Positions 14,595 to 48,499 of a stretch of 64,000 nt of DNA are shown piece after piece (the stretch's first letter is position 1; the number at the start of each line of letters is the position of its first letter). The notes under the pieces were generated by a model. It was given only the letters and a program-made list of their open reading frames with translations. It did no database searches and had not been told where the DNA came from. This stretch comes from Pecten maximus (Eukaryota), in the NCBI RefSeq assembly GCF_902652985.1, contig NC_047030.1:14198001-14262000 (forward strand), written 5' to 3'. A program made the position numbers and the translations under genes.

Positions 14595-17529
14595 AAATGT
14601 TTTCAATGAGATCAAAATTGCTGCCATCGTTCACAAATTTGTCTCCCGTTTAACTTGTTTAAAATTTCTCTTTTATCACCCAGAGTATGATAACTCTGTC
14701 AACCCCTAGGGTATGATAACTCTGTCAACCCCTAGGGTGTGATAACTCTGTCAACCCCTAGGGTCTGATAACTCTGTCAACCCCTAGGGTCTGATATCTC
14801 TGTCAACCCCTAGGGTATGATATCTCTGTCAACCCCAAGGGTATGATAACTCTGTCAACCCCTAGGGTGTGATATCTCTGACAACCCCTAGGGTATGATA
14901 ACTCTGTCAACCCCTAGGGTATGATAACCCTGTCAATCCCTACGATATGATATATCTGTCAACCCCTAGGGTATGATAACTCTGTCAACCCCTAGGGTAT
15001 GATATCTCTGTCAACCCCTAGGGTATGATAACTCTGTCAACCCCAAGGGTATGATAACTCTGTCAACCCCTAGGGTATGATAACTCTGTCAACCCCTAGG
15101 GTATGATAACTCTGTCAACCCCAAGGGTATGATAACTCTGTCAACCCCTAGGGTATGATAACTCTGTCAACCCCTAGGGTATGATAACTCTGTCAACCCC
15201 TAGGGTATGATAACTCTGTCAACCCCTAGGGTATGATTTCTCTGTCAACCCCAAGGGTATGATAACTCTGTCAACCCCTAGGGTATGATAACTCTGTCAA
15301 CCCCTAGGGTATGATACCTCTGTCAACCCCAAGGGTATGATAACTCTGTCAACCCCTAGGTTATGATTTCTCTGTCAACCCCTAGGGTGTGATTTCTCTG
15401 TCAACCCCTAGGGTATGATATCTCTGTCAACCCCTAGGGTATGATAACTCTGTCAACCCCTAGGGTATGATACCTCTGTCAACCCCAAGGGTATGATAAC
15501 TCTGTCAACCCCTAGGGTATGATATCTCTGTCAACCCCTAGGGTATGATAACTCTGTCAACCCCAAGGGTATGATAACTCTGTCAACCCCTAGGGTATGA
15601 TAACTCTGTCAACCCCTAGGGTATGATAACTCTGTCAACCCCAAGGGTATGATAACTCTGTCAACCCCTAGGGTATGATAACTCTGTCAACCCCTAGGGT
15701 ATGATAACTCTGTCAACCCCTAGGGTATGATAACTCTGTCAACCCCTAGGGTATGATTTCTCTGTCAACCCCAAGGGTATGATAACTCTGTCAACCCCTA
15801 GGGTATGATAACTCTGTCAACCCCTAGGGTATGATACCTCTGTCAACCCCAAGGGTATGATAACTCTGTCAACCCCTAGGTTATGATTTCTCTGTCAACC
15901 CCTAGGGTGTGATTTCTCTGTCAACCCCTAGGGTATGATATCTCTGTCAACCCCTAGGGTATGATAACTCTGTCAACCCCTAGGGTATGATACCTCTGTC
16001 AACCCCAAGGGTATGATAACTCTGTCAACCCCTAGGGTATGATAACTCTGTCAATCCCTACGATATGATAACTCTGTCAACCCCTAGGGTATGATTTCTC
16101 TGTCAACCCCTAGGGTATGATAACTCTGTCAACCCCTAGGGTATGATTTCTCTGTCAACCCCTAGGGTATGATAACTCTGTCAATCCCTACGATATGATA
16201 ACTCTGTCAACCCCTAGGGTATGATTTCTCTGTCAACCCCTAGGTTATGATTTCTCTGTCAACCCCTAGGGTATGATAACTCTGTCAACCCCTAGGGTAT
16301 GATAACTCTGTCAACCCCTAGGGTCTGATATCTCTGTCAACCCCTAGGGTATGATAACTCTGGCAACCCCTAGGGTATGATAACTCTGTCAATCCCTACG
16401 ATATGATAACTCTGTCAACCCCTAGGGTATGATTTCTCTGTCAACCCCTAGGTTATGATTTCTCTGTCAACCCCTAGGGTATGATAACTCTGTCAACCCC
16501 TAGGGTATGATAACTCTGTCAACCCCTAGGGTATGATAACTCTGTCAACCCCTAGGGTCTGATATCTCTGTCAACCCCTAGGTTATGATTTCTCTGTCAA
16601 CCCCTAGGTTATGATTTCTCTGTCAACCCCTAGGGTATGATATCTCTGTCAACCCCTAGGGTATGATAACTCTGTCAACCCCTAGGGTCTGATATCTCTG
16701 TCAACCCCTAGGTTATGATTTCTCTGTCAACCCCTAGGTTATGATTTCTCTGTCAACCCCTAGGGTATGATATCTCTGTCAACCCCTAGGGTATGATATC
16801 TCTGTCAACCCCTAGGGTGTGATATCTCTGTCAACCCCTAGGGTATGATTTCTCTGTCAACCCCTAGGGTATGATATCTCTGTCAACCCCTAGGGTGTGA
16901 TATCTCTGTCAACCCCTAGGGTATGATATCTCTGTCAATCCCTACGGACTGATATATCTGACAACCCTCTAGGGTGTGATATCTCTGTCAACCCCTAATG
17001 TATGATGTATCTGTCAACCACTAGGGTATGATATCTCTGTCAAACCCTAATGTATGATGTATCTATCAACCCCTAGGGTATGATGTATCTGTTAACCCCT
17101 AGGGTATGATATCTCTGTCACCCCCTAGGATATGATATCTCTGTCAACCCCTGGGGTATGATATCTCTGTCAGCCCCAAGGGTGTGGTGTCTCGATCAAC
17201 CCCTAGGATGTGATATCTCTGTCACCCTCTAGGGTGTGATATATCAGTCAACCCCTGGCGTATGATATATCTGTCAATCCCTACGTAATGATATATCTGT
17301 CAACCCCTAGAGTGTGGTGTCTCTGTCAATCCCTATGGTATGATATCTCTGTCAACCACAAGGGTATGGTATCTCTGTCAGCCCCTAGGGTATGATATCT
17401 CTTTCAGCCCCTAGGGTGTGATATCTCTGTCAATCCCTATGGTATGATATTTCTATCAACCCCTAGGGTATGATATCTCTGTCACCCTCTAGGGTGTGAT
17501 TTCTCTGTCAAGCCCTAGCGTATGATATA

Positions 17530-19278
17530 CGATGGGTGTTTCATAAATAATGTCATCTGTGCTTTATTTCGCGGAAATCGTGCAATTTATGCACAAAACC
17601 ACCTCGTGTCGATTGAGTGATCACTGGCTCGTGACACAGGTAAATATCTCGCCCACACGTTCACTGGCCTCGGTACAGTGTACATCGTTCCATAGCCTAT
17701 TCGTTAGACTAGACACAAAATTACAGGAAAACGAGCTGAAAATGTTCTTGAAATTAGGGCCTATATAAAAGGTAGGTCATTACTCGGCATAAAGGCTGTA
17801 GATATTCACCGCGAGGTGTGTGACATTTATGGGGAGGGCCAAATGTCTCACAGGTCTGTTTGTAGGTGGGTAGGTAAATTTAGTGCTGGGCAGCAGCAAC
17901 TGAAAGATGCTGTTCACCCAGGTCGTCCTGCAACAACTACGACCAAATGTAACATAGAAAAAATCCGAAATATCCTCAAAACTGATGCTCGATTCACCGT
18001 AAGACAATTGGCCCGAATGACAAACTTGTCGTTAGCAAGAGTTCATGCAATTTTGAAGAAACACCTAAAAGCTAGAAAGATAAATGCAAGATGGATACCC
18101 CATTTGTTAACGGATGAGCAAAAGAAGACGCGTGTAACAATGGCAAAAAAAACTTCTCAAAATGTACCCAAAATATAGTAAAAAGGCTTTTGATAATATA
18201 GTCACTGGTGATGAGACCTGGGTGTAATATTTTGAACCAAAACGGAAGGTTGCCAACCGAATATGGGCCACTAAAAATGCCAGACGCCCAAGTATTGCCA
18301 AACGAATACGAACGGTAAAGAAGGTTTTGTATGTTTTTTTTTTCACTAATAAGGGTCCAGCTATTCAAATCCCGGTGCCAAAAGGCAGAACGGTCACAGG
18401 CAAGTTCTATAAAAAAAGGTTGTTCTGAGAAACTTGTCGTTAGCAAGAGTTCATGCAATTTTGAAGAAACACCTAAAAGCTAGAAAGATAAATGCAAGAT
18501 GGATACCCCATTTGTTAACGGATGAGCAAAAGAAGACGCGTGTAACAATGGCAAAAAAACTTCTCAAAATGTACCCAAAATATAGTAAAAAGGCTTTTGA
18601 TAATATAGTCACTGGTGATGAGACCTGGGTGTAATATTTTGAACCAAAACGGAAGGTTGCCAACCGAATATGGGCCACTAAAAATGCCAGACGCCCAAGT
18701 ATTGCCAAACGAATACGAACGGTAAAGAAGGTTTTGTATGGTTTTTTTTTCACTAATAAGGGTCCAGCTATTCAAATCCCGGTGCCAAAAGGCAGAACGG
18801 TCACAGGCAAGTTCTATAAAAAAAGGTTGTTCTGAGAAAGTTGAAGAACTACTACAAAAGTCGCCGCCCCAAAACAGGACTTAAGTATGTCCGACTTTTG
18901 CATGATAATGAACCCGCTCACAAGGCACGTTTTGCGACTGACTTTTTGGAGTCGGAGAAGGTTACCGTCCTTCCGCACCCTCGATATTCGCCAGACTTGG
19001 CCCCCTCTGACTATTTTCTCATTCCAAACCTTAAATATCATTTATCTGGAAGGAGATACAATTCGAGAAATGCCCTTGGATCTGCTGTTTATCAGTGTCT
19101 GATGGTTGTACCCATTGAAGAGTATGAAAAATGCTTCCAAAAATGGATTGACCGGCTAAAAAGGTATGTTCTGGCTGGCGGAGAGTATTTTGAAGGGCAG
19201 AGCAAATTAAAATGAACAAAAGCACTTCCGCTATATGAGCACCGATGCAAGTGACATTATTTTTTGGAACACCCCTCG
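17530..19278 (+). mobile_element. Mariner (DD34D) DNA transposon, full-length but inactive, with an internal ~408-bp tandem duplication
   Basis: TA TSD at 17528-17529 and 19279-19280. TIRs CGATGGGTGTTTCATAAATAATGTCA / rc CGAGGGGTGTTCCAAAAAATAATGTCA. The empty site rebuilds a GATATATCTGTC satellite unit. Length without the duplication is about 1.34 kb. Confidence 0.95.
17720..19215 (+). pseudogene. Mariner transposase pseudogene
   Basis: HTH region, WIPHLL, TGDETW, HDNEP and YSPDLAPSDY motifs. Likely start codon mutated (ATT at 17720). Premature TAA after DETWV in both duplicate copies, plus frameshifts. Confidence 0.93.
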
Positions 19279-20474
19279 TATCTGTCAATCCCTACGGAAT
19301 GATATATCTGTCAACCCCTAGGGTATGATTTCTCTGTCAACACCTAGGAAATTATATCTCTGTCAGCCCTTAGGGTATGATATCTCTGTCAGTCCCTAGG
19401 GTGTGGTGTCTCTGTCAACCCCTATGGTATGATATATCTGTCAACCCCAAGGGTATGATATATCTGTCAGCCCCTAGGGTATGATATATCTGTCAACCCC
19501 TAGGGTATGGTCTCTCTGTCAACCCCTAGTGTATGATATCTCTGTCAACCCCTAGGGTGTGGTCTCTCTGTCCATCCCTATGGTATGCAATCTCTGTCAA
19601 CCCTAGGGTGTGATATATCTGTCAACCCCTATGGCATGGTATCTCTGTCAACCCCTAGGGTATGATTTCTCTGTCAACCCCTAGGGTATGATTTCTCTGT
19701 CAACCCCTAGGGTATGATTTCTCTGTCAACCCCGATGGTATGATATATCTGTCAACCCCTATGGTATGATATATCTGTCAATCCCTAGGGTGTGATATCT
19801 CTGTCAACCCCTAGGGTATGATATTTCTGTCAACCCCTAGGGTATGCTTTCTCTGTCAGCCCCTAGGGTGTGGTGTCTCTGTCAACCCCTATGGTATGAT
19901 ATCTCTGTCAACCCCTATCATATGATATATCTGTCAACCCCTAGGGTGTGATATTTCTGTCAACCCCTAGGGTGTGATATTTCTGTCAACCCCCTAGGGT
20001 ATGATTTCTCTGTCACCCCTAGGGTATGATAACTCTGTCAACCCCTAGGATGTGATAACTCTGTCAACCCCTATATGGTGTGATATCTCTGTCAACCCCT
20101 ATCGTATGATATTTCTGTCAACCCCTAGGATGTGATATCTCTGTCAACCCCTAGGATGTGATATTTCTGTCAACCCCTACCGTATGATATATCTGTCAAC
20201 CCCTATGGTGTGATATCTCTGTCAACCCCTATCGTATGATATTTCTGCCAACCCCTAGGGTGTGATATCTCTGTCAACCCCTAGCGTATGATATATCTGT
20301 CAACCCCTAGGGTATGATGTCTCTGTCAACCCCTAGGATGTGATATCTCTGTCAACCCCTAGCGTATGATATATCTGTCAACCCCTAGGGTATGATATCT
20401 CTGGCAATCCCTAGCGTATGATATATATGTCAACCCCTAGGGTGTGGTGTCTCTGTCAAACCCTAGGGTGTGAT

Positions 20475-22923
20475 TAATAGAATCTATCGCTAGTTAGTGT
20501 GTGGGATAGAGAAATCTCAACCACGAAGGTTTAGTTTTTGTCCAGGACGAGGCTTGCCGAGTCCTGGACTAAAAATCTAAACCTGAGTGGTTGAGATTTC
20601 TCTATCCCACACACTAACTAGCGATTGATTATTTTTCTCACACTTGTGACAGAGTTTATATTGCATAAATTAGTATTTCCTGTAGCAATTAAACCATTTT
20701 AGATGTTGGCGCAGTAATACGTTCAGCACTACTTCCACTTCCTGTCTGTCGGTCAACTTCCTGTTGTCTGTCTGTCAACTTCCTGTTGTCTGTCTTCTGC
20801 TTCAGTTCATCATATTGTATTCTGAAATGGAAAAAAACATTTAAGATTGGTGATTATGTGACTGTTGGTGCAGGTGGTAAGAAAGGAAAAATTGTAAACA
20901 CTGAAAAACCCTTGGGTACATACACCATGTACAAAATACAACTGTTAGATGGTGGAAATATTGTAAGTGCTGCCAGGCATGAACTGGTTAAAGGAATGCC
21001 CATGGATGAATTCGATTTTGGTCAAATATTTGGAGAGGAACTTGCAGACAAGTATGATCACTCTCTACTTCATGATATATTTGATACACCTACTCACACA
21101 GATAATGGTCATGCACAAATACAATCTGAGAATTCTGCGGCTACAGGTTCATCCCTACCCCCAGATCCTTCATTTCCAAATTCTGCCAAAACTGGTCAAG
21201 ATTCCACTTCTAGATTTGTTCCTATTGATGATGGTGATGTGGAGAAATTTTTGAATGAAAATAAAAATAAAAACACAGCAAGAAAAACATTGAGCCATAT
21301 AAAACTGTTGAAAACATTTCTGGAATCCAAAAATGAGGTTAGAGAACCCCAAAACATACCGCCTGAACAGCTTAATGAATATCTGTGTCAATTCATCATC
21401 TCTGTCAGACAAAAAGATGGTAAGGAGTATCAGCCGTCAGTATTGCGAGGAATGATTGGTTCTTTTGACCGCCATTTGAAACGACACAAGTATGAGTGTA
21501 ACATAATTGGAGGGTTTCCTTTTTCTAAGACAAGGGATGCGTTGAAATCTAAGCAAAAGGACCTAAAAAAACAAGGGCTTGGAAATAAACCTAAAGCAGC
21601 TGACCCAATCACTCAAAAAGACATTGAACAATTTTACAGTGCTGGTCAACTTGGAAATGACACACCCTCTAGTTTAATCAATACCCTTTGGCTGAATAAC
21701 ACTTTGCATTTTGGCATGAGAGGTGGTGCTGAAGAGCACAGAGCCATGCGTTGGGGCGACTTGGAGCTTAAATACGATCACAATTTGGGCTTAGAATATT
21801 TAACACATAACGAGAGACAGACAAAAACCAGAACCGGTGCTGACCTTACCAATATTCGTTATTCAAACCCAAAAATGTATGAACTACCCGACAAAAAAGA
21901 CCGCTGTCCAGTCACGACTTACAAAAAATTCTCGGACAAACGACCAGCTGGTTTCAGTCAACCACATCATCCATTTTATTTAGCTGTGGTTACACATGTG
22001 GCCAATCCAACTGATGAGGAGAAATGGTTTTTAAGTGGACCTATTGGTGTAAACAAACTGAGATCTCTGATGTCAACAATGATAAAAAAATCAAACATGA
22101 ATGACGAAGGCAAACGACTTACCAACACTAGCGCCAGAAAACATCTCTGTCAACTTCTGCTGGACAACAACGTGCCCGACACACTGGCTGTGCATTGGAC
22201 CGGCCATAAAAACCCAAACTCGCTGAACAATTACAGAACTGTGTCTTCAGAAACTCAGTTGCATGTCTCGAACATGTTGTGTGGAATTACTCGCCCTTGC
22301 TTACCGAATGAACGGATATCCGGTCTCCAGTCGTCGACGCAGTCAAGCACAACGAAACACACTGTAAACACTAGTACTTCCAGCACGCTGAGATCTGTTT
22401 TTGACGGTGCCACGATTCACGGGGGCACTTTTAACGTTCATATTCATAACCATAGCCAAAAACGCCCAGCAAAACGAAGGAGACCAGCTTTAGTCTTCAG
22501 TGATAGCGATGACGACTTCCAGTGACCTATACATTGGTACATTGTATTTATTCTAACCACAGGGGCCGGTGATTCTAACCTTAACGTTAAGCTAATATTA
22601 GCGTGTTTCGGAGTACACAGACTGACGTTTTCGCTTAAATTAATTTACCGGAAGAATTTCAATGTGTATATTGATGAAAATAAAATTCATTGTATTTATT
22701 CAAAATTTTCTTTTTATGTTATTTGATTCCATGCAATTTATTTAAAATAACAGTTGAAAAAAAAACGAACTATATTTTTTTGAGGAAGAAAAAAATCCTT
22801 CGATTTCAAGAGATTGCTGCGGTTGCATTGTGACGTCATAGCACGAGCTGTCCCACCCTAGGTTGGGACAGGAATATCCCCAACTAGTAAAACTACGGGA
22901 AAACTCTGTCACAAGTGTGAGAA
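20475..22923 (+). mobile_element. Crypton (tyrosine-recombinase DNA transposon), apparently full length, no TSD
   Basis: 5' hairpin 20481-20630 (loop ACGAGGCTTGCCGAGT). Perfect 24-bp inverted repeat at 20634-20657 / 22901-22924. Single YR ORF, AATAAA at 22679, subterminal palindrome at 22848-22871. The flanks rejoin as GGGTGTGAT^ATCTCTGTC, an intact satellite unit. Confidence 0.9.
20786..22525 (+). CDS. Crypton tyrosine recombinase (DUF3504 / ZMYM-KCTD1-QRICH1-related family), intronless
   Basis: 579-aa ORF. Core-binding region NTARKT...LCQFIISVRQKDGKEYQPSVLR. Catalytic motifs FGMRGG (R), ERQTKTRTG (K), RCPV, TNTSARK (HxxR position) and TGHKNPNSLNNY (H, Y). C-terminal basic NLS-like and acidic tail. 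The probable true ATG (20827) is 1 nt out of frame across an A7 run. Confidence 0.92.
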   Translation: MSVFCFSSSYCILKWKKTFKIGDYVTVGAGGKKGKIVNTEKPLGTYTMYKIQLLDGGNIVSAARHELVKGMPMDEFDFGQIFGEELADKYDHSLLHDIFDTPTHTDNGHAQIQSENSAATGSSLPPDPSFPNSAKTGQDSTSRFVPIDDGDVEKFLNENKNKNTARKTLSHIKLLKTFLESKNEVREPQNIPPEQLNEYLCQFIISVRQKDGKEYQPSVLRGMIGSFDRHLKRHKYECNIIGGFPFSKTRDALKSKQKDLKKQGLGNKPKAADPITQKDIEQFYSAGQLGNDTPSSLINTLWLNNTLHFGMRGGAEEHRAMRWGDLELKYDHNLGLEYLTHNERQTKTRTGADLTNIRYSNPKMYELPDKKDRCPVTTYKKFSDKRPAGFSQPHHPFYLAVVTHVANPTDEEKWFLSGPIGVNKLRSLMSTMIKKSNMNDEGKRLTNTSARKHLCQLLLDNNVPDTLAVHWTGHKNPNSLNNYRTVSSETQLHVSNMLCGITRPCLPNERISGLQSSTQSSTTKHTVNTSTSSTLRSVFDGATIHGGTFNVHIHNHSQKRPAKRRRPALVFSDSDDDFQ

Positions 22924-25900
22924 ATCTCTGTCAACCCCTAGGGTGTGGTCTCTCTGTCAATCCCTATGGTATGGTATCTCTGTCAACCCCTAGGGTGTGA
23001 TATATCTTTCAACCCCTATGGTGTGGTCTCTCTGTCAATCCCTATGGTATGATATATCTGTCAACCCCAAGGTTATGATTTCTCTGTCAACCCCTATGGT
23101 ATTATATCTCTGTCAATCCCTATGGCATGATTTCTCTGTCAACACCTAGGGTGTGATATCTATGTCAACCGCTATGGTATGATACCTCTGTCAACCCCTA
23201 GGTTATGATATCTCTGTCAACCCCTATGGTATGATACCTCTGTCAACCCCAAGGGTATGATTAATCTGTCAACCCCTAGGGTGTGATACCTCTGTCAATC
23301 CCTACGGAATGATATCTCTGTCAACCCCTATGGTATGATATCTCTGTCAATCCCTATGGTATGATTTATCTGTCAACCCCTAGCGTATGCTATCTCTGTC
23401 AACCCCTAGGGTATGATATCTCTGTCAACCCCTAGGGTGTGATACCTCTGTCAATCCCTACGGAATGATTTATCTGTCAACCCCTAGCGTATGCTATCTC
23501 TGTCAACCCCTAGGGTATGATATCTCTGTCAACCCCTAGGGTGTGATACCTCTGTCAATCCCTACGGAATGATATCTCTGTCAACCCCTAGGGTATGATT
23601 TATCTGTCAACCCCTAGGGTATGATTTATCTGTCAACCCCTATGGTGTGATATCTCTGTCAATCCCTACGGAATGATATCTCTGTCAACCCCTAGGGTAT
23701 GATTTATCTGTCAACCCCTAGGGTATGATTTATCTGTTAACCCCTAGGGTGTGATACCTCTGTCAATCCCTACGGAATGATATCTCTGTCAACCCCTAGG
23801 GTATGATTTATCTGTCACTTCCTAGGGTGTGGTCTCTCTGTCAATCCCTAGGGTAGGATTTCTCTGTCAACCCCTAGGGTGTGGTCTCTCTGTCAACCCC
23901 TATGGTATGATACCTCTGTCAACCCCTAGGGTGTGGTATCTCTGTCAACCCCTATGGTATGATACCTCTGTCAATCCCTAGGGTGTGATACCTCTGTCAA
24001 CCCCTATGGTATTATACCTCTGTCAACCCCTAGGGTGTGATATATCTGTCAACCCCTAGGGTGTGATACCTCTGTCAACCCCTAGGGTGTGATAACTCTG
24101 TCAATCCCTATGGTATGATATCTCTGTCAATCCCTACGATATGATATATCTGTCAACCCCTAGGGTGTGATATCTCTGTCGACCCCTAGGGTGTGATATC
24201 TCTGTCGACCCCTAGGGTGTGATATCTCTGTCAACCCCTAGGGTGTGATATTTCTGTCAAACCCTAGGGTGTGATATCTCTGTCAACCCCTAGGGTGTGA
24301 TATCTCTGTCGACCCCTAGGGAATGATATTTCTGTTAACCCCTAGGGTATGATTTCTTTGTCAACCCTCTAAGGTGTGATTTCTCTGTCAACCCCTAGGG
24401 TGTGATATATCTGTCAACCTCTAGGTAATGATATCTCTTTCAGCCCCTAGGGTGTGATATCTCTGTCAACCCCTAGGGTATGATATCTCTATCAACCCCT
24501 AGGGTATGATACCTTTGACAACCCCTAGGGTGTGATATTTTTGTCAATCCCTAGGGTATGATATTTCTGTCAACCCCTAGGGTGTGATATCTCTGTCAAC
24601 CCCTAGGGTATGATACCTTTGACAACCCCTAGGGTGTGATATTTCTGTCAACCCCTAGGGTGTGATATATCTGTCAATCCCTACGGAATGATATCTCTGT
24701 CAACCCCTATGGTATGATATCTCTGTCAATCCCTATGGTATGATTTATCTGTCAACCCCTAGCGTATGATATCTCTGTCAACCCCTAGGGTATGATATCT
24801 CTGTCAACCCCTAGGGTGTGGTACCTCTGTCAATCCCTACGGAATGATATCTCTGTCAACCCCTAGGGTGTGATATTTCTGTCAACCCCTAGGGTGTGAT
24901 ATTTCTGTCAACCCCCTAGGGTATGATTTCTCTGTCACCCCTAGGGTATGATAACTCTGTCAACCCCTAGGATGTGATAACTCTGTCAACCCCTATATGG
25001 TGTGATATCTCTGTCAACCCCTAGGGTATGATTTATCTGTCAACCCCTATGGTGTGATATCTCTGTCAATCCCTACGGAATGATATCTCTGTCAACCCCT
25101 AGGGTATGATTTATCTGTCAACCCCTAGGGTATGATTTATCTGTTAACCCCTAGCGTATGATATCTCTGTCAACCCCTATCGTATGATATATCTGTCAAC
25201 CCTTAGGGTGTGATATTTCTGTCAACCCCTAGGGTGTGATATTTCTGTCAACCCCTAGGGTATGATTTCTCTGTCACCCCTAGGGTATGATAACTCTGTC
25301 AACCCCTAGGATGTGATAACTCTGTCAACCCCTATCGTATGATATATCTGTCAACCCCTATGGTGTGATATCTCTGTCAACCCCTATCGTATGATATTTC
25401 TGTTAACCCCTAGGGTGTGATATCTCTGTCAACCCCTAGCGTATGATATATCTGTCAACCCCTAGGGTGTGATATCTCTGTGAATCCCTAGGGTATGATA
25501 TCTCTGGCAACCCCTAGCGTATGATATATCTGTCAACCCCTAGGGTGTGGTCTCTCTGTCAAACCCTAGGGTGTGATATCTCTGTCAACCCCTAGGGTGT
25601 GGTCTCTCTGTCAATCCCTATGGTATGATATATCTGTCAACCCCAAGGTTATGATTTCTCTGTCAACCCCTATGGTATTATATCTCTGTCAATCCCTATG
25701 GTATGATTTCTCTGTCAACCCCTAGGGTGTGATATCTATGTCAACCGCTATGGTATGATACCTCTGTCAACCCCTAGGGTATGATATCTCTGTCAACCCC
25801 TATGGTATGATACCTCTGTCAACCCCAAGGGTATGATTAATCTGTCAACCCCTAGGGTGTGATACCTCTGTCAATCCCTACGGAATGATATCTCTGTCAA

Positions 25901-28900
25901 TCCCTATGGTATGATTTATCTGTCAACCCCTAGCGTATGATATCTCTGTCAACCCCTAGGGTATGATATCTCTGTCAACCCCTAGGGTGTGATATCTCTG
26001 TCACCCCCTAGGGTGTGATACCTCTGTCAATCCCTACGGAATGATATCTCTGTCAACCCCTAGGGTATGATTTATCTGTCAACCCCTAGGGTATGATTTA
26101 TCTGTCAACCCCTAGGGTATGATTTATCTGTCAACCCCTAGGGTGTGATACCTCTGTCAATCCCTACGGAATGATATCTCTGTCAACTCCTAGGGTATGA
26201 TTTATCTGTCACCTCCTAGGGTGTGGTCTCTCTGTCAATTCCTAGGGTATGATTTCTTTGTCAACCCCTAGGGTGTGGTCTCTCTGTCAACCCCTATGGT
26301 ATGATACCTCTGTCAACCCCTAGGGTGTGCTATCTCTGCCAACCCCTAGGGTGTGATACCTCTGTCAACCCCTATGGTATGATACCTCTGTCAACCCGTA
26401 GGGTGTGATATATCTGTCAACCCCTAGGGTGTGATACCTCTGTCAACCCTTAGGGTGTGATAACTCTGTCAATCCCTATGGAATGATATCTGTGTCAATC
26501 CCTACGATATGATATATCTGTCAACCCCTAGGGTGTGATATCTCTGTCGACCCCTAGGGTGTGATATCTCTGTCGACCCCTAGGGTGTGATATCTCTGTC
26601 AACCCCTAGGGTGTGATATCTCTGTCGACCCCTAGGGAATGATATTTCTGTTAACCCCTAGGGTATGATTTCTTTGTCAACCCTCTAAGGTGTGATTTCT
26701 CTGTCAACCCCTAGGGTGTGATATATCTGTCAACCTCTAGGTAATGATATCTCTTTCAGCCCCTAGGGTGTGATATCTCTGTCAACCCCTAGGGTATGAT
26801 ATCTCTGTCAGCCCCTAGGGAATGATATCTCTGTCAACCCCTAGGGTGTGATATCTCTGTCAACCCCTAGGGTGTGATATCTCTGTCAACCCCTAGCGTA
26901 TGATATATCTGTCAACCCCTATGGTGTGATATCTCTGTCAACCCCTATCGTATGATATTTCTGTTAACCCCTAGGGTGTGATATCTCTGTCAACCCCTAG
27001 CGTATGATATCTCTGTCAATCCCTAGGGTATGATATCTCTGGCAACCCCTAGCGTATGATATATCTGTCAACCCCTAGGGTGTGGTGTCTCTGTCAAACC
27101 CTAGGGTGTGATATCTCTGTTAACCCCTAGGGTGTGGTCTCTCTGTCAATCCCTATGGTATGATATTTCTGTCAACCCCTAGGGTGTGATATATCTTTCA
27201 ACCCCTACGGTGTGGTCTCTCTGTCAATCCCTATGGTATGATATATCTGTCAACCCCAAGGTTATAATTTCTCTGTCAACCCCTATGGTATTATATCTCT
27301 GACAATCCCTATGGTATGATTTCTCTGTCAACCCCTAGGGTGTGATATCTATGTCTACCGCTAGGGTATGATACCTCGGTCAACCCCTCGGGTATGATAC
27401 CTCTGTCAACCCCAAGGGTATGATTAATCTGACAACCCCTAGGGTGTGATACCTCTGTCAATCCCTCCGGAATGATATCTCTGTCAACCCCTATGGTATG
27501 ATACCTCTGTCAATCCCTATGGTATGATTTATCTGTCAACCCCTAGCGTATGATATCTCTGTCAACCCCTAGGGTATGATATCTCTGTCAACCCCTAGGG
27601 TGTGATATCTCTGTCACCCCCTAGGGTGTGATACCTCTGTCAATCCCTACGGAATGATATCTCTGTCAACCCCTAGGGTATGATTTATCTGTCAACCCCT
27701 AGGGTATGATTTATCTGTCAACCCCTAGGGTGTGATAACTCTGTCAATCCCTATGGTATGATATCTCTGTCAATCCCTACGATATGATATATCTGTCAAC
27801 CCCTAGGGTGTGATATCTCTGTTCACCCCTAGGGTGTGATATCTCTGTCAACCCCTAGGGTGTGATATTTCTGTCAAACCCTAGGGTGTGATATCTCTGT
27901 CAACCCCTAGGGTGTGATATCTCTGTCCATCCCTAGGGAATGATATTTCTGTTAACCCCTAGGGTATGATTTCTTTGTCAACCCTCTAAGGTTTGATTTC
28001 TCTGTCAACCCCTAGGGTGTGATATATCTGTCAACCTCTAGGTAATGATATCTCTTTCAGCCCCTAGGGTGTGATATCTCTGTCAACCCCTAGGGTATGA
28101 TATCTCTATCAACCCCTAGGGTATGATACCTTTGACAACCCCTAGGGTGTGATATTTTTGTCAACCCCTAGGGTATGATATTTCTGTCAACCCCTAGGGT
28201 GTGATATCTCTGTCAACCCCTAGGGTATGATACCTTTGACAACCCCTAGGGTGTGATATTTCTGTCAACCCCTAGGGTGTGATATATCTGTCAACCCCTA
28301 GGGTATGATATCTCTGTCAGCCCCTAGGGAATGATATCTCTGTCAACCCCTAGGGTATGATATCTCTGTCAACCCCTAGGGTGTGATAACCTGTCAACCC
28401 CTAGGGAATGATATCTCTGTCAGCCCCTTGGGTATGATATCTCTTTCAGCCCCTAGGGTGTGATATCTCGGTCAATCCCTATGGTATGATATCTCTATCA
28501 ACCCGCAGGGTATGATATATCTGTCAACCCCTAGGTTGTGATATCTCTGTCAACCACTAGGTTGTGATATCTCTGTCAGCCCCCAGGGTGTGATATCTCT
28601 GTCAACCCCTAGGGTGTGATATCTCTGTCAATCCCTAGGGTGTGATATCTCTAACAATCCCTATGGTATGATATCTCTGTCAGCCCCTAGGGTGTGTGTC
28701 TCTGTCAATTCCTAAGGAATGATATCTCTGTCAACTACCAGGGTATGACAGGTCGCACGTAAAGTCAGCATTTTATTGCATTTCTTTGGATCATACGTAA
28801 AAATATGATAGGAGAAAAATAGTCACCTCTACCTTCGGGACAAAGAGACAGCTCAAGCCCTCGGGGTTTTAAACGTGATTGTCTAACCCTCAGCAGAGAT

Positions 28901-29203
28901 TCAGGTTAGACAACCAAGAATATCACCCTAGGTTTGAAGATTTCTTGATCACACCCTAAATGATGGAGACGATCGAGGAATATGTCACAGTTTTATGTTT
29001 TATTCCATGTCGATGTAGCGTTACACTGACATTGACATTGACTGAACTATCTTTTTCAATTTTGAACGTATGCATCATGAATCACTAAGTAACTTATCCT
29101 GAACGTATTTATAACAAATGTAACTTATACAAACTTAAAGTTTATTTCTAATATAGTCTATTTGAAAAACTACTGAACATTTTTTCTAATTTAATCTACG
29201 GTA

Positions 29204-47200: not shown

Positions 47201-48499
47201 ATTACTGGCTGTGTCAGTACATTCAATGTAATCAACACTCGTTAAGGTAGTGAAGTATTTTTGTCTTCCACAGATGGGGTTCAACGGCAGTAACTGACAT
47301 GAAAAATGAGAAAGTTTAATCATAATTACAATAGAATTAATGCACAATTTAACTACTTATATTCAAATCATTAAAAACATGGTTTAAAAAGGAAATATAT
47401 TTTGAGAAATGTCCAAGGCGAGGGATGATATTAACAGTAATGGCCCTCTGTGGAAAGAGCTCGATACAAAGAGCCAGAATTATTTTATTATACCGAACGA
47501 ACTAAACAAATGTAAATTTGCTCGATTATCTAATCAACATATTGAAACATAAAAAATCAACATTTTTAAAACAATTTTCATATATCACACCGGGGATGTC
47601 GTCCTTATACTGCATAAAAATGTATGACGTCATAATGGGGCCCGCGAAAGGTTATCGTCCCGGGGTTATCGACCCGGGGTTGTCGGCCTCGTACTGCTGT
47701 TTCGGGGAAATGTATCAGTTATAGCATGCCACATGGTAACGTTCAGTCCATTGATATCAGTGTAAATAAAAGCGAGATATAATAATATTGCTTGTCTAAC
47801 AGGAGGCTCTGCGGAGGATTGGACAAGAATATCACCTAGAGATTCGCTTGCTGGTTTTCTGCCACATCCTCAATGCAGCGGACTATTACTGTTTTCCTAT
47901 CATTTACTTATTTATTTATTCAGGTCCAGGTGTTCAAATAATGATCAGTTCAATGACCGCGCCAATAGTCATACTATTCATTTTATGAATATGAATATCA
48001 AACTTAATGTTAAAGATTACGTGTACCAGTAGTAATTAGTGTGACATAATCTGACCCCGATCGTTGAGTTCCCCCAGTCATCCGAGTGGATGAATGAACA
48101 TTTTGCTCTTACCCAGGTTCTCTTATGTCTCTTACATTAATGTTGCATCAATGCAACACAATGCTTTAACGTTATTGAATTGTCGAAATGACGCCATTAT
48201 ATTGTTGCCGTGACGTCATTGTATTGTTGCTGTGAGGTTAGTGTATTGTTGCCTGATTGTAATTCCTGTCAAACCTACCATACCCTAGATGAAGGAGCAA
48301 TGGTTTTGGATTAATATAATGTTTGTGCCTTGAAAAATGCTGGAATCGGCCAATCGGTGGGGAAACACAGTCATGCAATAAAACACAAAACCGTGCGTTA
48401 TCATTTCGTTAAGAAATATTGTCAAAATGAAGTCGAAAAATCCAGCTTTAACTAACATATATTTGCAAGCAGTTCTGGAAGATCAATATATAGTGAGAC

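What the first reader, a model, noticed from the sequence alone, without database searches (positions are those of the whole stretch)
14665..28985. About 10 kb of satellite appears to be the amplified subterminal palindrome (putative recombinase site) of a Crypton
Seen: the reverse complement of the last unit and its flank (28721-28755), CGACCTGTCATACCCTGGTAGTTGACAGAGATATC, aligns without gaps to the subterminal motif of the recombinase-encoding element (22844-22878), CGAGCTGTCCCACCCTAGGTTGGGACAGGAATATC. In the autonomous element a second half-copy starts exactly 26 bp after the first (22848 vs 22874), which equals the satellite period. The array is bracketed by a decayed Crypton-type hairpin (28879-28913) and an inverted terminal repeat pair (28806-28817 / 14665-14678). 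Established: tyrosine recombinases bind inverted arms around a 6-8 bp spacer (loxP, FRT); the motif has 8-bp arms and an 8-bp spacer. Inference: a 1.5-copy motif in a small non-autonomous Crypton expanded to about 380 copies, giving a dense array of candidate recombinase-binding sites.
Basis: partly seen in the sequence, partly recalled or inferred. Interest (0 to 1): 0.88.

Follow-up and report, generated by a model that had tools for sequence, protein, structure and literature searches.

The report
Satellite born from a Crypton transposon
A 10-kb tandem repeat in this scallop-like genome is the runaway expansion of a 26-base piece that normally sits once or twice near one end of a small non-coding relative of tyrosine-recombinase (Crypton) jumping genes, a route to satellite DNA I found described in no paper for this transposon class.

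Summary
The 26-bp satellite (378 units, 9.86 kb) lies inside one copy of a short non-autonomous element spanning about 14616-28980. Profiles built only from other copies of that family match the left flank (E 8e-21), the array's last unit plus closing palindrome (E 5e-12) and the right flank with its decayed hairpin (E 4e-39), in the expected order. Short copies carry 1-2 units, one carries 8, and other arrays carry from about 8 to over 200 units, several with the same ends.

The family shares end architecture and homologous ends with autonomous Cryptons. Its closest relative is a different lineage on another chromosome (57% protein identity to the window's recombinase), not the Crypton inside the array. 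That Crypton (20475-22923) and a mariner-like element are later insertions.

The palindrome behind the unit keeps its position near the non-hairpin end and shows compensatory arm changes across lineages, so it probably acts in cis. It lies 53 nt from the element junction, so it is not the integration crossover point. Recombinase binding is untested. Earlier follow-ups of this scan had already reported hairpin-ended scallop Cryptons on other windows. The link to a satellite was not in any note I could see.

The parts
14616..14669 (+). Left terminus of the array-bearing non-autonomous element. It is homologous to the reverse complement of a Crypton 3' (non-hairpin) end and is decayed at its outer 14 nt.
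   Evidence: A family left profile built from 13 other loci hits 14609-14711 at E 8e-21. The 25-mer terminus motif sits at window 14630-14654.
14670..17529 (+). Satellite block A. The first unit is degenerate and is followed by about 109 units of 26 bp. The block includes the TA at 17528-17529 that the mariner-like insertion duplicated.
17530..19278 (+). Later insertion of a mariner-like DDE element. It has inverted ends of about 27 nt, a TA duplication (17528-29 / 19279-80) and an internal 407-bp tandem duplication. Its reading frame is broken.
   Evidence: Sequence. TRF finds a 407-bp repeat x2. Pfam gives weak Mos1-type HTH_48 and DDE_3 hits, both below Pfam's own cut-offs.
19279..20474 (+). 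Satellite block B (about 46 units).
20475..22924 (+). Later insertion of an autonomous Crypton ('window-type'). Its parts are a hairpin at 20475-20633, an inverted repeat at 20634-20657 / 22901-22924, a recombinase frame at 20786-22525 and a palindrome at 22848-22871. There is no target duplication. It entered at unit phase 22. Base 22924 may belong to the target.
   Evidence: Pfam DUF3504 at E 1.9e-20. Five to six copies at 97-100% identity share the same ends. Inverted repeats. Insertion phase.
22925..28726 (+). Satellite block C (about 223 units).
28727..28760 (+). Closing palindromic unit (28727-28750) plus the GCACGT box. It holds the only TGACAG arm in the whole array and stands exactly where short family members have it.
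   Evidence: The family left profile hits 28700-28771 at E 5e-12, collinear with the left flank. TGACAG occurs only here within the satellite blocks (its one other occurrence in the span, at 20647, is in the inserted Crypton's inverted repeat).
28761..28825 (+). Short internal region and the internal inverted copy of the terminus (28805-28825).
28826..28980 (+). Decayed hairpin of about 145 nt and the hairpin-side terminus of the non-autonomous element.
   Evidence: The family right profile hits 28786-28973 at E 3.6e-39 and also matches on the opposite strand, as expected for a palindrome. Folding.

Best explanation
Shown: the satellite is an internal part of one copy of a short, non-coding, mobile element family.

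Read on the + strand, a typical copy has these parts in order:
- a 53-nt terminus;
- one 26-bp unit;
- a closing 24-bp palindrome of the type CTGTCA..CCCTAGGG..TGACAG;
- a GCACGTG box;
- a variable interior;
- a short inverted copy of the terminus;
- a hairpin of about 145 nt;
- an end whose reverse complement reads TAATAGAATC.

The same layout and homologous ends occur in autonomous tyrosine-recombinase (Crypton) elements of this genome, so the family is a non-autonomous Crypton relative.

Shown: the autonomous lineages carry the palindrome once. The short family carries one extra 26-bp copy. Individual copies carry 8, tens or hundreds of copies, and this copy carries 378.

Inferred: the first tandem duplication made the stretch prone to replication slippage and unequal exchange, and these grew the array. 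Array-bearing copies or their arrays then spread or arose at other places.

Shown: a mariner-like element and a 2.45-kb Crypton inserted after the array had formed, because each splits a unit cleanly.

Inferred: the palindrome is a cis-acting site for the recombinase, an accessory or binding site rather than the crossover point. If so, each satellite unit keeps one arm (CTGTCA) plus the CCCTAGGG core, and the array is a dense row of half-sites.

The confidence given is for the origin of the satellite. I put the binding-site inference at about 0.45.
For: - Family profiles built without the window hit both flanks and the array's last unit in the right order and strand: E 8e-21, 5e-12 and 3.6e-39.
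- Of 19 loci retrieved with the right flank, 11 hold both ends. Unit cores per copy are 1, 2 (ten loci) and 8.
- The 8-core expansion in L043 uses a different unit variant and is unique to that locus. C6:25819153 has at least 3 cores of a third variant, so expansions were independent.
- Other arrays of the same 26-mer carry the same left terminus (ten places) and the same closing palindrome plus GCACGT (C5, C10, C11). The C11 array has both ends about 31 units apart.
- Homology to Crypton ends: the right profile against the window Crypton's hairpin end gives E 4.8e-12, anchored at the element's first base. The left profile against its 3' end gives 11 bits, E 2e-4, anchored at the last base.
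- The L057-type Crypton scores 64 bits (E 1e-18) and 145 bits (E 1.5e-43) with an ORF between the two hits.
- No target duplication appears in six Crypton copies or in the short copies.
- The palindrome arms change in step between lineages at position 6 and its mirror: C:G, T:A, A:T.
- The palindrome's distance from the non-hairpin end stays at 53-78 nt even though the ORF's orientation relative to the ends is opposite in the two autonomous lineages.
- The recombinase motifs are conserved across lineages.
Against: - The similarity of the window Crypton's 3' end to the family is weak on its own (11 bits).
- I could fetch no further genomic loci, so the ends of other arrays are known only from match coordinates and query ranges. 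'All arrays' could not be tested.
- The direction of evolution (one copy to many) rests on parsimony across lineages, not on a rooted tree.
- The palindrome lies 53 nt inside the element, so it is not the strand-exchange site for integration.
- No binding or cleavage data exist.
- The expansion mechanism is not distinguishable from sequence.
- The satellite is rare: about 2000 units genome-wide by scaling.
Confidence: 0.85

Rival explanations
1. The direction is reversed. The 26-bp satellite existed first, and an ancestor of the short element family captured one or two units of it.
For: Mobile elements can pick up flanking repeats. The array units are internally more uniform (84-90% matches) than the family copies are to each other (about 70-80%). 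That shows only that the array is younger or homogenised.
Against: - Three autonomous Crypton lineages, about 57% identical in protein, carry a single palindrome of the same type at the homologous place next to the non-hairpin end, with compensatory arm changes.
- Two further expansions use different unit variants that match their own host copy.
Confidence: 0.05
2. The likeness between the inserted Crypton and the satellite reflects target choice. On this reading the Crypton integrates where the target mimics its own 3' end, and each satellite unit offers such a site (GTGTGAT against the element's terminal GTGTGAGAA). This would sit alongside the origin story rather than replace it.
For: - The insertion lies right after GGGTGTGAT with no duplication.
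- Left flanks of four of the six copies of the window-type Crypton end in AT (three of them in GAT), and several resemble the element's 3' end.
- L036 holds another hairpin element inserted right after the closing palindrome of a family member.
- The junction CCTAGGGTGAGAT|TAATAGAATC recurs at 35 places, with 0 in the control.
- Chlamydomonas CryptonF-1 ends in CACCG and targets CAYCG (PMC9977147).
Against: - Five of the six copies of this Crypton lie in unrelated AT-rich DNA.
- With the satellite's own GTGTGAT spelling, only the window's junction and one diverged hit were found in the whole genome.
- The 35 junctions may be copies of one composite element rather than independent insertions.
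- The shared target core is only 3-7 nt.
Confidence: 0.25
3. The array grew through the recombinase itself, by unequal site-specific exchange between directly repeated half-sites or by re-integration of excised unit circles, rather than by slippage or unequal homologous exchange.
For: - The same 26-bp stretch expanded independently at least three times.
- Unit length is kept very strictly: 360 of 375 spacings are exactly 26 bp.
- The unit holds the candidate site.
Against: - No higher-order pattern or junction signature specific to recombinase action was seen.
- Strict unit length is normal for short satellites.
- The family also carries an unrelated 22-bp internal minisatellite, so it may simply be repeat-prone.
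Confidence: 0.12
4. The resemblance between satellite and Crypton motif is chance, and the array is an ordinary satellite unrelated to any mobile element.
Against: The profile E-values for both flanks, the shared ends at other arrays and the simulation controls all argue against chance.
Confidence: 0.01

Closest known systems
Cg_HINE: non-autonomous Helentrons of the Pacific oyster that carry satellite-like central repeats (PMC7492417)
   Same: Tandem repeats sit inside a short non-autonomous DNA element between conserved flanks. Copy number varies between copies. Arrays are scattered over all chromosomes and are linked to classical satellites.
   Different: The carrier here is a tyrosine-recombinase (Crypton-type) element with a hairpin end and no target duplication, not a rolling-circle Helentron. 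The repeat unit is derived from a palindrome with recombinase-site geometry.
DTC84 / pearl tandem-repeat-containing MITEs of clams and oysters (PMC3879986)
   Same: A flanking 'cassette' encloses a variable number of core repeats. A palindrome near the unit junction is proposed there as a hotspot for length change.
   Different: DTC84 has up to five repeats and a putative AA target duplication. Here there is no duplication, the expansion reaches 378 units, and the ends are homologous to an autonomous recombinase element.
Cryptons (Goodwin et al. 2003 model; Kojima and Jurka 2011, PMC3212892; CryptonA with DUF3504, PMC13465315)
   Same: The element encodes a lone tyrosine recombinase with a DUF3504 match. 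There is no reverse transcriptase and no target duplication, and integration occurs next to a short sequence resembling one terminus.
   Different: The papers I could search describe Cryptons as lacking terminal inverted repeats and mention neither hairpins nor palindromes. These elements have a 145-160-nt hairpin at one end, an inverted copy of the other end beside it, a subterminal palindrome, and abundant non-autonomous derivatives.
loxP / FRT / dif-type core sites of tyrosine recombinases
   Same: Two inverted arms flank a 6-8-bp spacer. Here the arms are 8 bp and the spacer 8 bp, and arm symmetry is kept by compensatory changes.
   Different: The arms are shorter than the usual 11-13 bp. 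The site lies 53 nt from the element junction, so it is not the integration crossover. Binding and cleavage are untested.
CgiSat40 of Crassostrea gigas, listed as similar to DNA/Crypton (PMC8268682, Table 2)
   Same: It is a satellite with an annotated likeness to a Crypton in a bivalve.
   Different: It is only a table entry with a 673-bp monomer. No analysis is given of which part of a Crypton it matches, of its ends, or of short parent elements.

Membership tests
Crypton (autonomous element 20475-22924) | Encodes a tyrosine recombinase and no reverse transcriptase or DDE transposase | tested here: met
   Pfam gives DUF3504 at E 1.9e-20 (74 bits, cut-off 29.7), with QRICH1 and Phage_integrase hits below their cut-offs. 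The R / K / R / H / Y motif positions are conserved in ten related frames. It is the only long frame in the element.
Crypton (autonomous element 20475-22924) | No target-site duplication, and a short similarity between one terminus and the target | tested here: met
   Six copies share the same ends and have no duplicated flank. The satellite phase continues exactly across the insertion. Left flanks resemble the 3' end.
Crypton (autonomous element 20475-22924) | No terminal inverted repeats (as stated in PMC3212892) | tested here: not met
   A perfect 24-bp inverted repeat (20634-20657 / 22901-22924) and a 159-nt hairpin are present in all copies. This is a departure in end structure, not in the enzyme.
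Crypton (autonomous element 20475-22924) | Moves through an excised circular intermediate | not testable with these tools
Non-autonomous derivative of a Crypton (element about 14616-28980) | Both ends homologous to those of an autonomous element, in the same order and orientation, with no recombinase gene of its own | tested here: met
   The L057-type Crypton matches the family profiles at E 1e-18 (left) and 1.5e-43 (right) with its ORF between them. The window flanks match the same profiles. No ORF of the host element appears.
Non-autonomous derivative of a Crypton (element about 14616-28980) | Many dispersed copies with unrelated flanks | tested here: met
   The terminus 25-mer has 252 hits against 0 in the control. 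The closing 24-mer has 373 hits against 0. Flanks differ in all loci read. Both counts include the L057-type lineage.
Satellite DNA | Long head-to-tail array of a fixed monomer, present at several loci | tested here: met
   The window holds 378 units, with 360 of 375 spacings at exactly 26 bp. Genome-wide there are 1200 unit-junction matches on most chromosomes. Abundance is low, about 2000 units by scaling.
Transposon-borne satellite (Cg_HINE / DTC84 kind) | The array lies between the conserved flanks of a mobile element, and copy number varies among copies | tested here: met
Tyrosine-recombinase core site (loxP/FRT kind) | Inverted arms around a 6-8-bp spacer | tested here: met
   The geometry is 8+8+8 at 22848-22871. 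Arm symmetry is kept by compensatory changes in three lineages.
Tyrosine-recombinase core site (loxP/FRT kind) | Strand exchange takes place within the site | tested here: not met
   Element-chromosome junctions lie at 20475 and 22923/4, which is 53 nt from the palindrome.
Tyrosine-recombinase core site (loxP/FRT kind) | Bound and cleaved by the cognate recombinase | not testable with these tools
   This needs a gel shift, footprint or ChIP experiment.

The most novel reading that the evidence does not exclude
The subterminal palindrome is a true recombinase-binding site. Its amplified half-sites would then make these arrays act on living Cryptons in one of two ways. They could be sinks that titrate the recombinase, a built-in brake. 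Or they could be preferred landing pads, because each unit also mimics the element's 3' end; that would explain the Crypton sitting in this array and the Crypton-in-satellite cases noted elsewhere in this genome.
Probability: 0.2. Interest if true: 0.8.

Novelty: new variant of a known kind. Interest (0 to 1): 0.6.

Why it matters
How Cryptons recognise their own DNA is unknown, and the papers I could search describe them as having almost no recognisable ends. This locus and its relatives give a graded series: one palindrome in the autonomous elements, two copies in a short derivative, then 8, about 30 and 378 copies. That series ties a defined cis-element of a tyrosine-recombinase transposon to the birth of a satellite.

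It adds Cryptons to the transposon classes known to seed satellites in bivalves. It also supplies short candidate sequences that can go straight into binding and integration assays: the terminus, the hairpin, the 24-bp palindrome and the 26-bp unit.

Tried and rejected
- I first took the 159-nt hairpin at 20475-20633 for a separate MITE inserted beside a TIR-bounded element. I rejected this because all six copies carry it at the same place.
- I tested whether the window-type Crypton is satellite-specific. It is not: five of six copies lie in unrelated DNA.
- I tested for repeated insertions at the same phase of this satellite. Only the window's own junction and one diverged hit carry the GTGTGAT spelling. 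The other 33 hits share a different spelling and may be one composite family.
- I looked for a higher-order repeat structure in the array. Autocorrelation only decays with distance, and no clear higher-order period appears.
- At whole-window scale the family left profile did not report the window Crypton's 3' end. It appears only in an element-only search without filters (11 bits), so I treat that match as weak.
I did not try to read flanks by other means and used only match coordinates.
- Searches of the scan's notes by sequence and by longer word sets gave nothing.
Full report
**What is in the window**

Tandem Repeats Finder reports a 26-bp repeat in three blocks: 14685-17527, 19281-20474 and 22924-28748. 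Anchoring on the CTGTCAA start of the unit gives 378 units. Of the 375 spacings, 360 are exactly 26 bp, and the consensus is the same in all three blocks. The satellite totals 9,863 bp.

Two foreign pieces interrupt it:
- The first, 17530-19278, is a mariner-like element. It has inverted ends of about 27 nt, a TA duplication and an internal 407-bp tandem duplication. Its Pfam HTH_48 and DDE_3 matches are weak and lie below Pfam's own cut-offs.
- The second, 20475-22923/4, encodes a 579-codon open frame that matches DUF3504 at E 1.9e-20, with a weak Phage_integrase match.

DUF3504 is the domain that Kojima and Jurka traced to Crypton tyrosine recombinases (PMC3212892). In ten related frames from this genome the expected catalytic positions are conserved: R in FG(M/L)R, K in TKTR, R in SARK, H in (T/S)GH and Y in NY.

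**The inserted Crypton**

A whole-genome search finds five or six near-full copies at 97-100% identity. All begin with the same 159-nt hairpin and end with the same 24 bases, which are a perfect inverted copy of the 24 bases that follow the hairpin. None has a target duplication.

Only the window copy lies in the satellite; the others are in unrelated AT-rich DNA. The satellite phase runs on exactly across the insertion, which entered after position 22 of a unit. The Crypton therefore arrived after the array existed. It cannot be the array's parent merely by sitting in it.

They agree at 24 of 35 positions without gaps, and this is the best placement of that 35-mer anywhere in the element. None of 300 first-order Markov simulations reached 23, and unrelated window DNA reached at most 20. 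The resemblance is real but modest. The stronger evidence comes from the flanks.

**The flanks belong to a dispersed family of short elements**

Searching the genome with the right flank gave over 50 matches to a stretch of about 170 nt. In 11 of the 19 loci fetched, the left-flank sequence lies 150-900 bp away in the same order and orientation as in the window.

Read side by side, these copies share one plan:
- a terminus of about 53 nt;
- one 26-bp unit;
- a closing 24-bp palindrome of the CTGTCA..CCCTAGGG..TGACAG type;
- a GCACGTG box;
- a variable interior, often with a 22-bp GACGTCA-containing minisatellite;
- a short inverted copy of the terminus;
- a hairpin of about 145 nt;
- an end whose reverse complement reads TAATAGAATC.

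That last decamer is identical to the first ten bases of the autonomous Crypton.

I built two profiles from these other loci only. In the window with the array masked:
- The left profile hits 14609-14711 (E 8e-21) and 28700-28771 (E 5e-12). Both hits are on the + strand and collinear.
- The right profile hits 28786-28973 (E 3.6e-39).

The array therefore occupies exactly the place of the unit in a family copy that spans about 14616-28980. The TGACAG arm that closes the palindrome occurs only once in the satellite, at its last unit. The hairpin of this copy is decayed: its DNA folding energy is -17.3 kcal/mol (z -1.8), against -69.7 (z -21) for the Crypton hairpin.

**Unit numbers**

| Copy or place | Cores or units |
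|---|---|
| L040 | 1 core |
| Ten short loci | 2 cores |
| L043 | 8 cores |
| C6:25819153 | at least 3 cores |
| C13, C19 | at least 8 units |
| C5 | at least 11 units |
| C4, C11 | about 31 units |
| C2, C14 | at least about 50 units |
| C10 (4.4 kb), C12 (6.3 kb) | about 170 to 240 units |
| This window | 378 units |

The 8-core run in L043 uses a different unit variant (7 of 26 positions differ from the window unit) and is unique to that locus. The C6 run uses a third variant. The same stretch has therefore expanded independently several times.

The unit-junction 35-mer has 1200 matches genome-wide against 0 in the control. Of these, 228 are in this window, which scales to roughly 2000 units in the genome.

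Ten arrays abut the same left terminus. At least three end in the closing palindrome plus GCACGT. The C11 array shows both ends. These statements therefore rest on coordinates and query ranges, and 'all arrays' remains untested.

**Relation to Cryptons**

The right profile also hits the window Crypton's hairpin end at E 4.8e-12, anchored on the element's first base. The left profile hits its last 78 bases, anchored on the last base, but with only 11 bits (E 2e-4 in an element-only search).

A second autonomous lineage, L057-type (C2:15694767-15697257), is 57% identical in protein to the window recombinase. It matches both profiles far better: 64 bits (E 1e-18) and 145 bits (E 1.5e-43), with its ORF between the two hits. 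It has three or four full copies at 95-96% identity and dozens of internally deleted copies at 97-99%. The satellite-bearing family is thus a non-autonomous relative of that lineage, and the Crypton in the array is a cousin.

**The palindrome**

The autonomous lineages carry it once. In the window-type it starts 53 nt from the non-hairpin end. In the L057-type it is preceded by a 23-nt stretch that starts with a lone CTGTC. In the short family it is preceded by a full extra 26-bp unit.

Across lineages the arms change in step at position 6 and its mirror: C:G in the window-type, T:A in L016 and A:T in the L057-type.

The ORF points away from the hairpin in the window-type and towards it in the L057-type, yet the palindrome stays beside the non-hairpin end. 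This fits a cis-acting role in transposition better than a promoter role.

The arm motif also recurs in the terminal inverted repeat. This is read directly from the sequence.

The palindrome is not the integration crossover, because the element-chromosome junctions lie 53 nt away. Recombinase binding is an inference.

**Mechanism**

Shown:
- the place of the array within a family copy;
- the graded copy numbers;
- the independent expansions;
- the later insertions.

Inferred:
- A first 26-bp duplication made the stretch unstable, and slippage or unequal exchange did the rest.
- A recombinase-driven route cannot be excluded, but nothing specific supports it.
- The array is a row of half-sites, each with one arm plus the CCCTAGGG core.

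A complementary idea is that units mimic the Crypton's 3' end and attract insertions. Some observations favour it:
- The window insertion lies after GGGTGTGAT.
- L036 has a nested insertion right after a closing palindrome.
- A junction with a CCCTAGGG-type motif next to a hairpin start recurs at 35 places.

Against it, five of the six copies of this Crypton are elsewhere, and the 35 places may be one composite family.

**Literature and earlier notes**

Satellites carried by non-autonomous elements are well known in bivalves, for example Helentron Cg_HINE (PMC7492417) and DTC84/pearl (PMC3879986). A Crassostrea satellite is listed as Crypton-like in a table without analysis (PMC8268682).

The Crypton papers I could search mention no hairpins, no palindromes and no satellite derivatives. 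In Chlamydomonas, active Cryptons target a pentamer matching their terminus (PMC9977147).

Earlier follow-ups of this scan, on other windows of the same genome, already reported hairpin-ended Cryptons and an internal complement of the circle junction. I saw the same design in this copy. None of the notes shown to me linked a satellite to the subterminal palindrome. Those notes call the organism the king scallop. The assembly size and contig number agree with my memory of that assembly, but I did not test this.

**Verdict**

This is a new variant of a known kind: a transposon-borne satellite whose carrier is a Crypton.

Noticed in passing
window 17530-19278: A mariner-like element lies inside the satellite. 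It has a TA duplication, inverted ends of about 27 nt and an internal 407-bp tandem duplication (18018-18843) that breaks the transposase frame.
   Followed up: partly
window 47776-48293 (minus strand): A second, truncated member of the same short Crypton-like family. The right profile hits it at E 3e-20, and it carries the 22-bp GACGTCA minisatellite at 48179-48253. It lacks the left terminus and half of the hairpin.
   Followed up: partly
L057 (C2:15694767-15697257) compared with window 20475-22924: The recombinase ORF has opposite orientation relative to the hairpin and non-hairpin ends in two Crypton lineages, while the palindrome stays beside the non-hairpin end.
   Followed up: partly
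35 genomic places, e.g. C7:25673881 (L072:142-164): The junction CCTAGGGTGAGAT followed by TAATAGAATC recurs 35 times, with 0 in the control. In L072 a 2.84-kb Crypton (155-2996) sits in a palindromic target whose two flanks can pair as a 9-bp stem around GAAA. These may be independent insertions beside a palindrome or one amplified composite.
   Followed up: partly
L036 (C13:24426954-24430129), minus strand: A short family member carries a nested insertion of about 0.7 kb of another hairpin-started element. The insertion lies right after its closing palindrome.
   Followed up: no
window 20621-20657 and 22901-22924 + 20475-20490: The right arm of the hairpin plus the following 24 bases is the reverse complement of the junction that a circularised element would have. 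A circle would therefore carry a palindrome of about 208 bp.
   Followed up: partly
window 20786-20930: The long recombinase frame has no in-frame ATG before codon 48. An ATG at 20828 lies in another frame beside a run of A. The N-terminal part is conserved in other lineages.
   Followed up: no
window 22144-22155: A 12-nt exact match to the satellite consensus (ATCTCTGTCAAC) lies inside the recombinase ORF. The profile E-value is 0.19, so it may be chance.
   Followed up: no
L030:1150-1420 and other family copies: Many family copies carry a second internal tandem repeat of 22 bp containing TGACGTCA-like motifs, with up to about 12 copies. The window Crypton has a single GACGTCA beside its palindrome at 22832-22838.
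   Followed up: no
C2:11097928-11099228: An array of the same satellite has at least one unit-junction match on the opposite strand inside it, which suggests an internal inversion.
   Followed up: no
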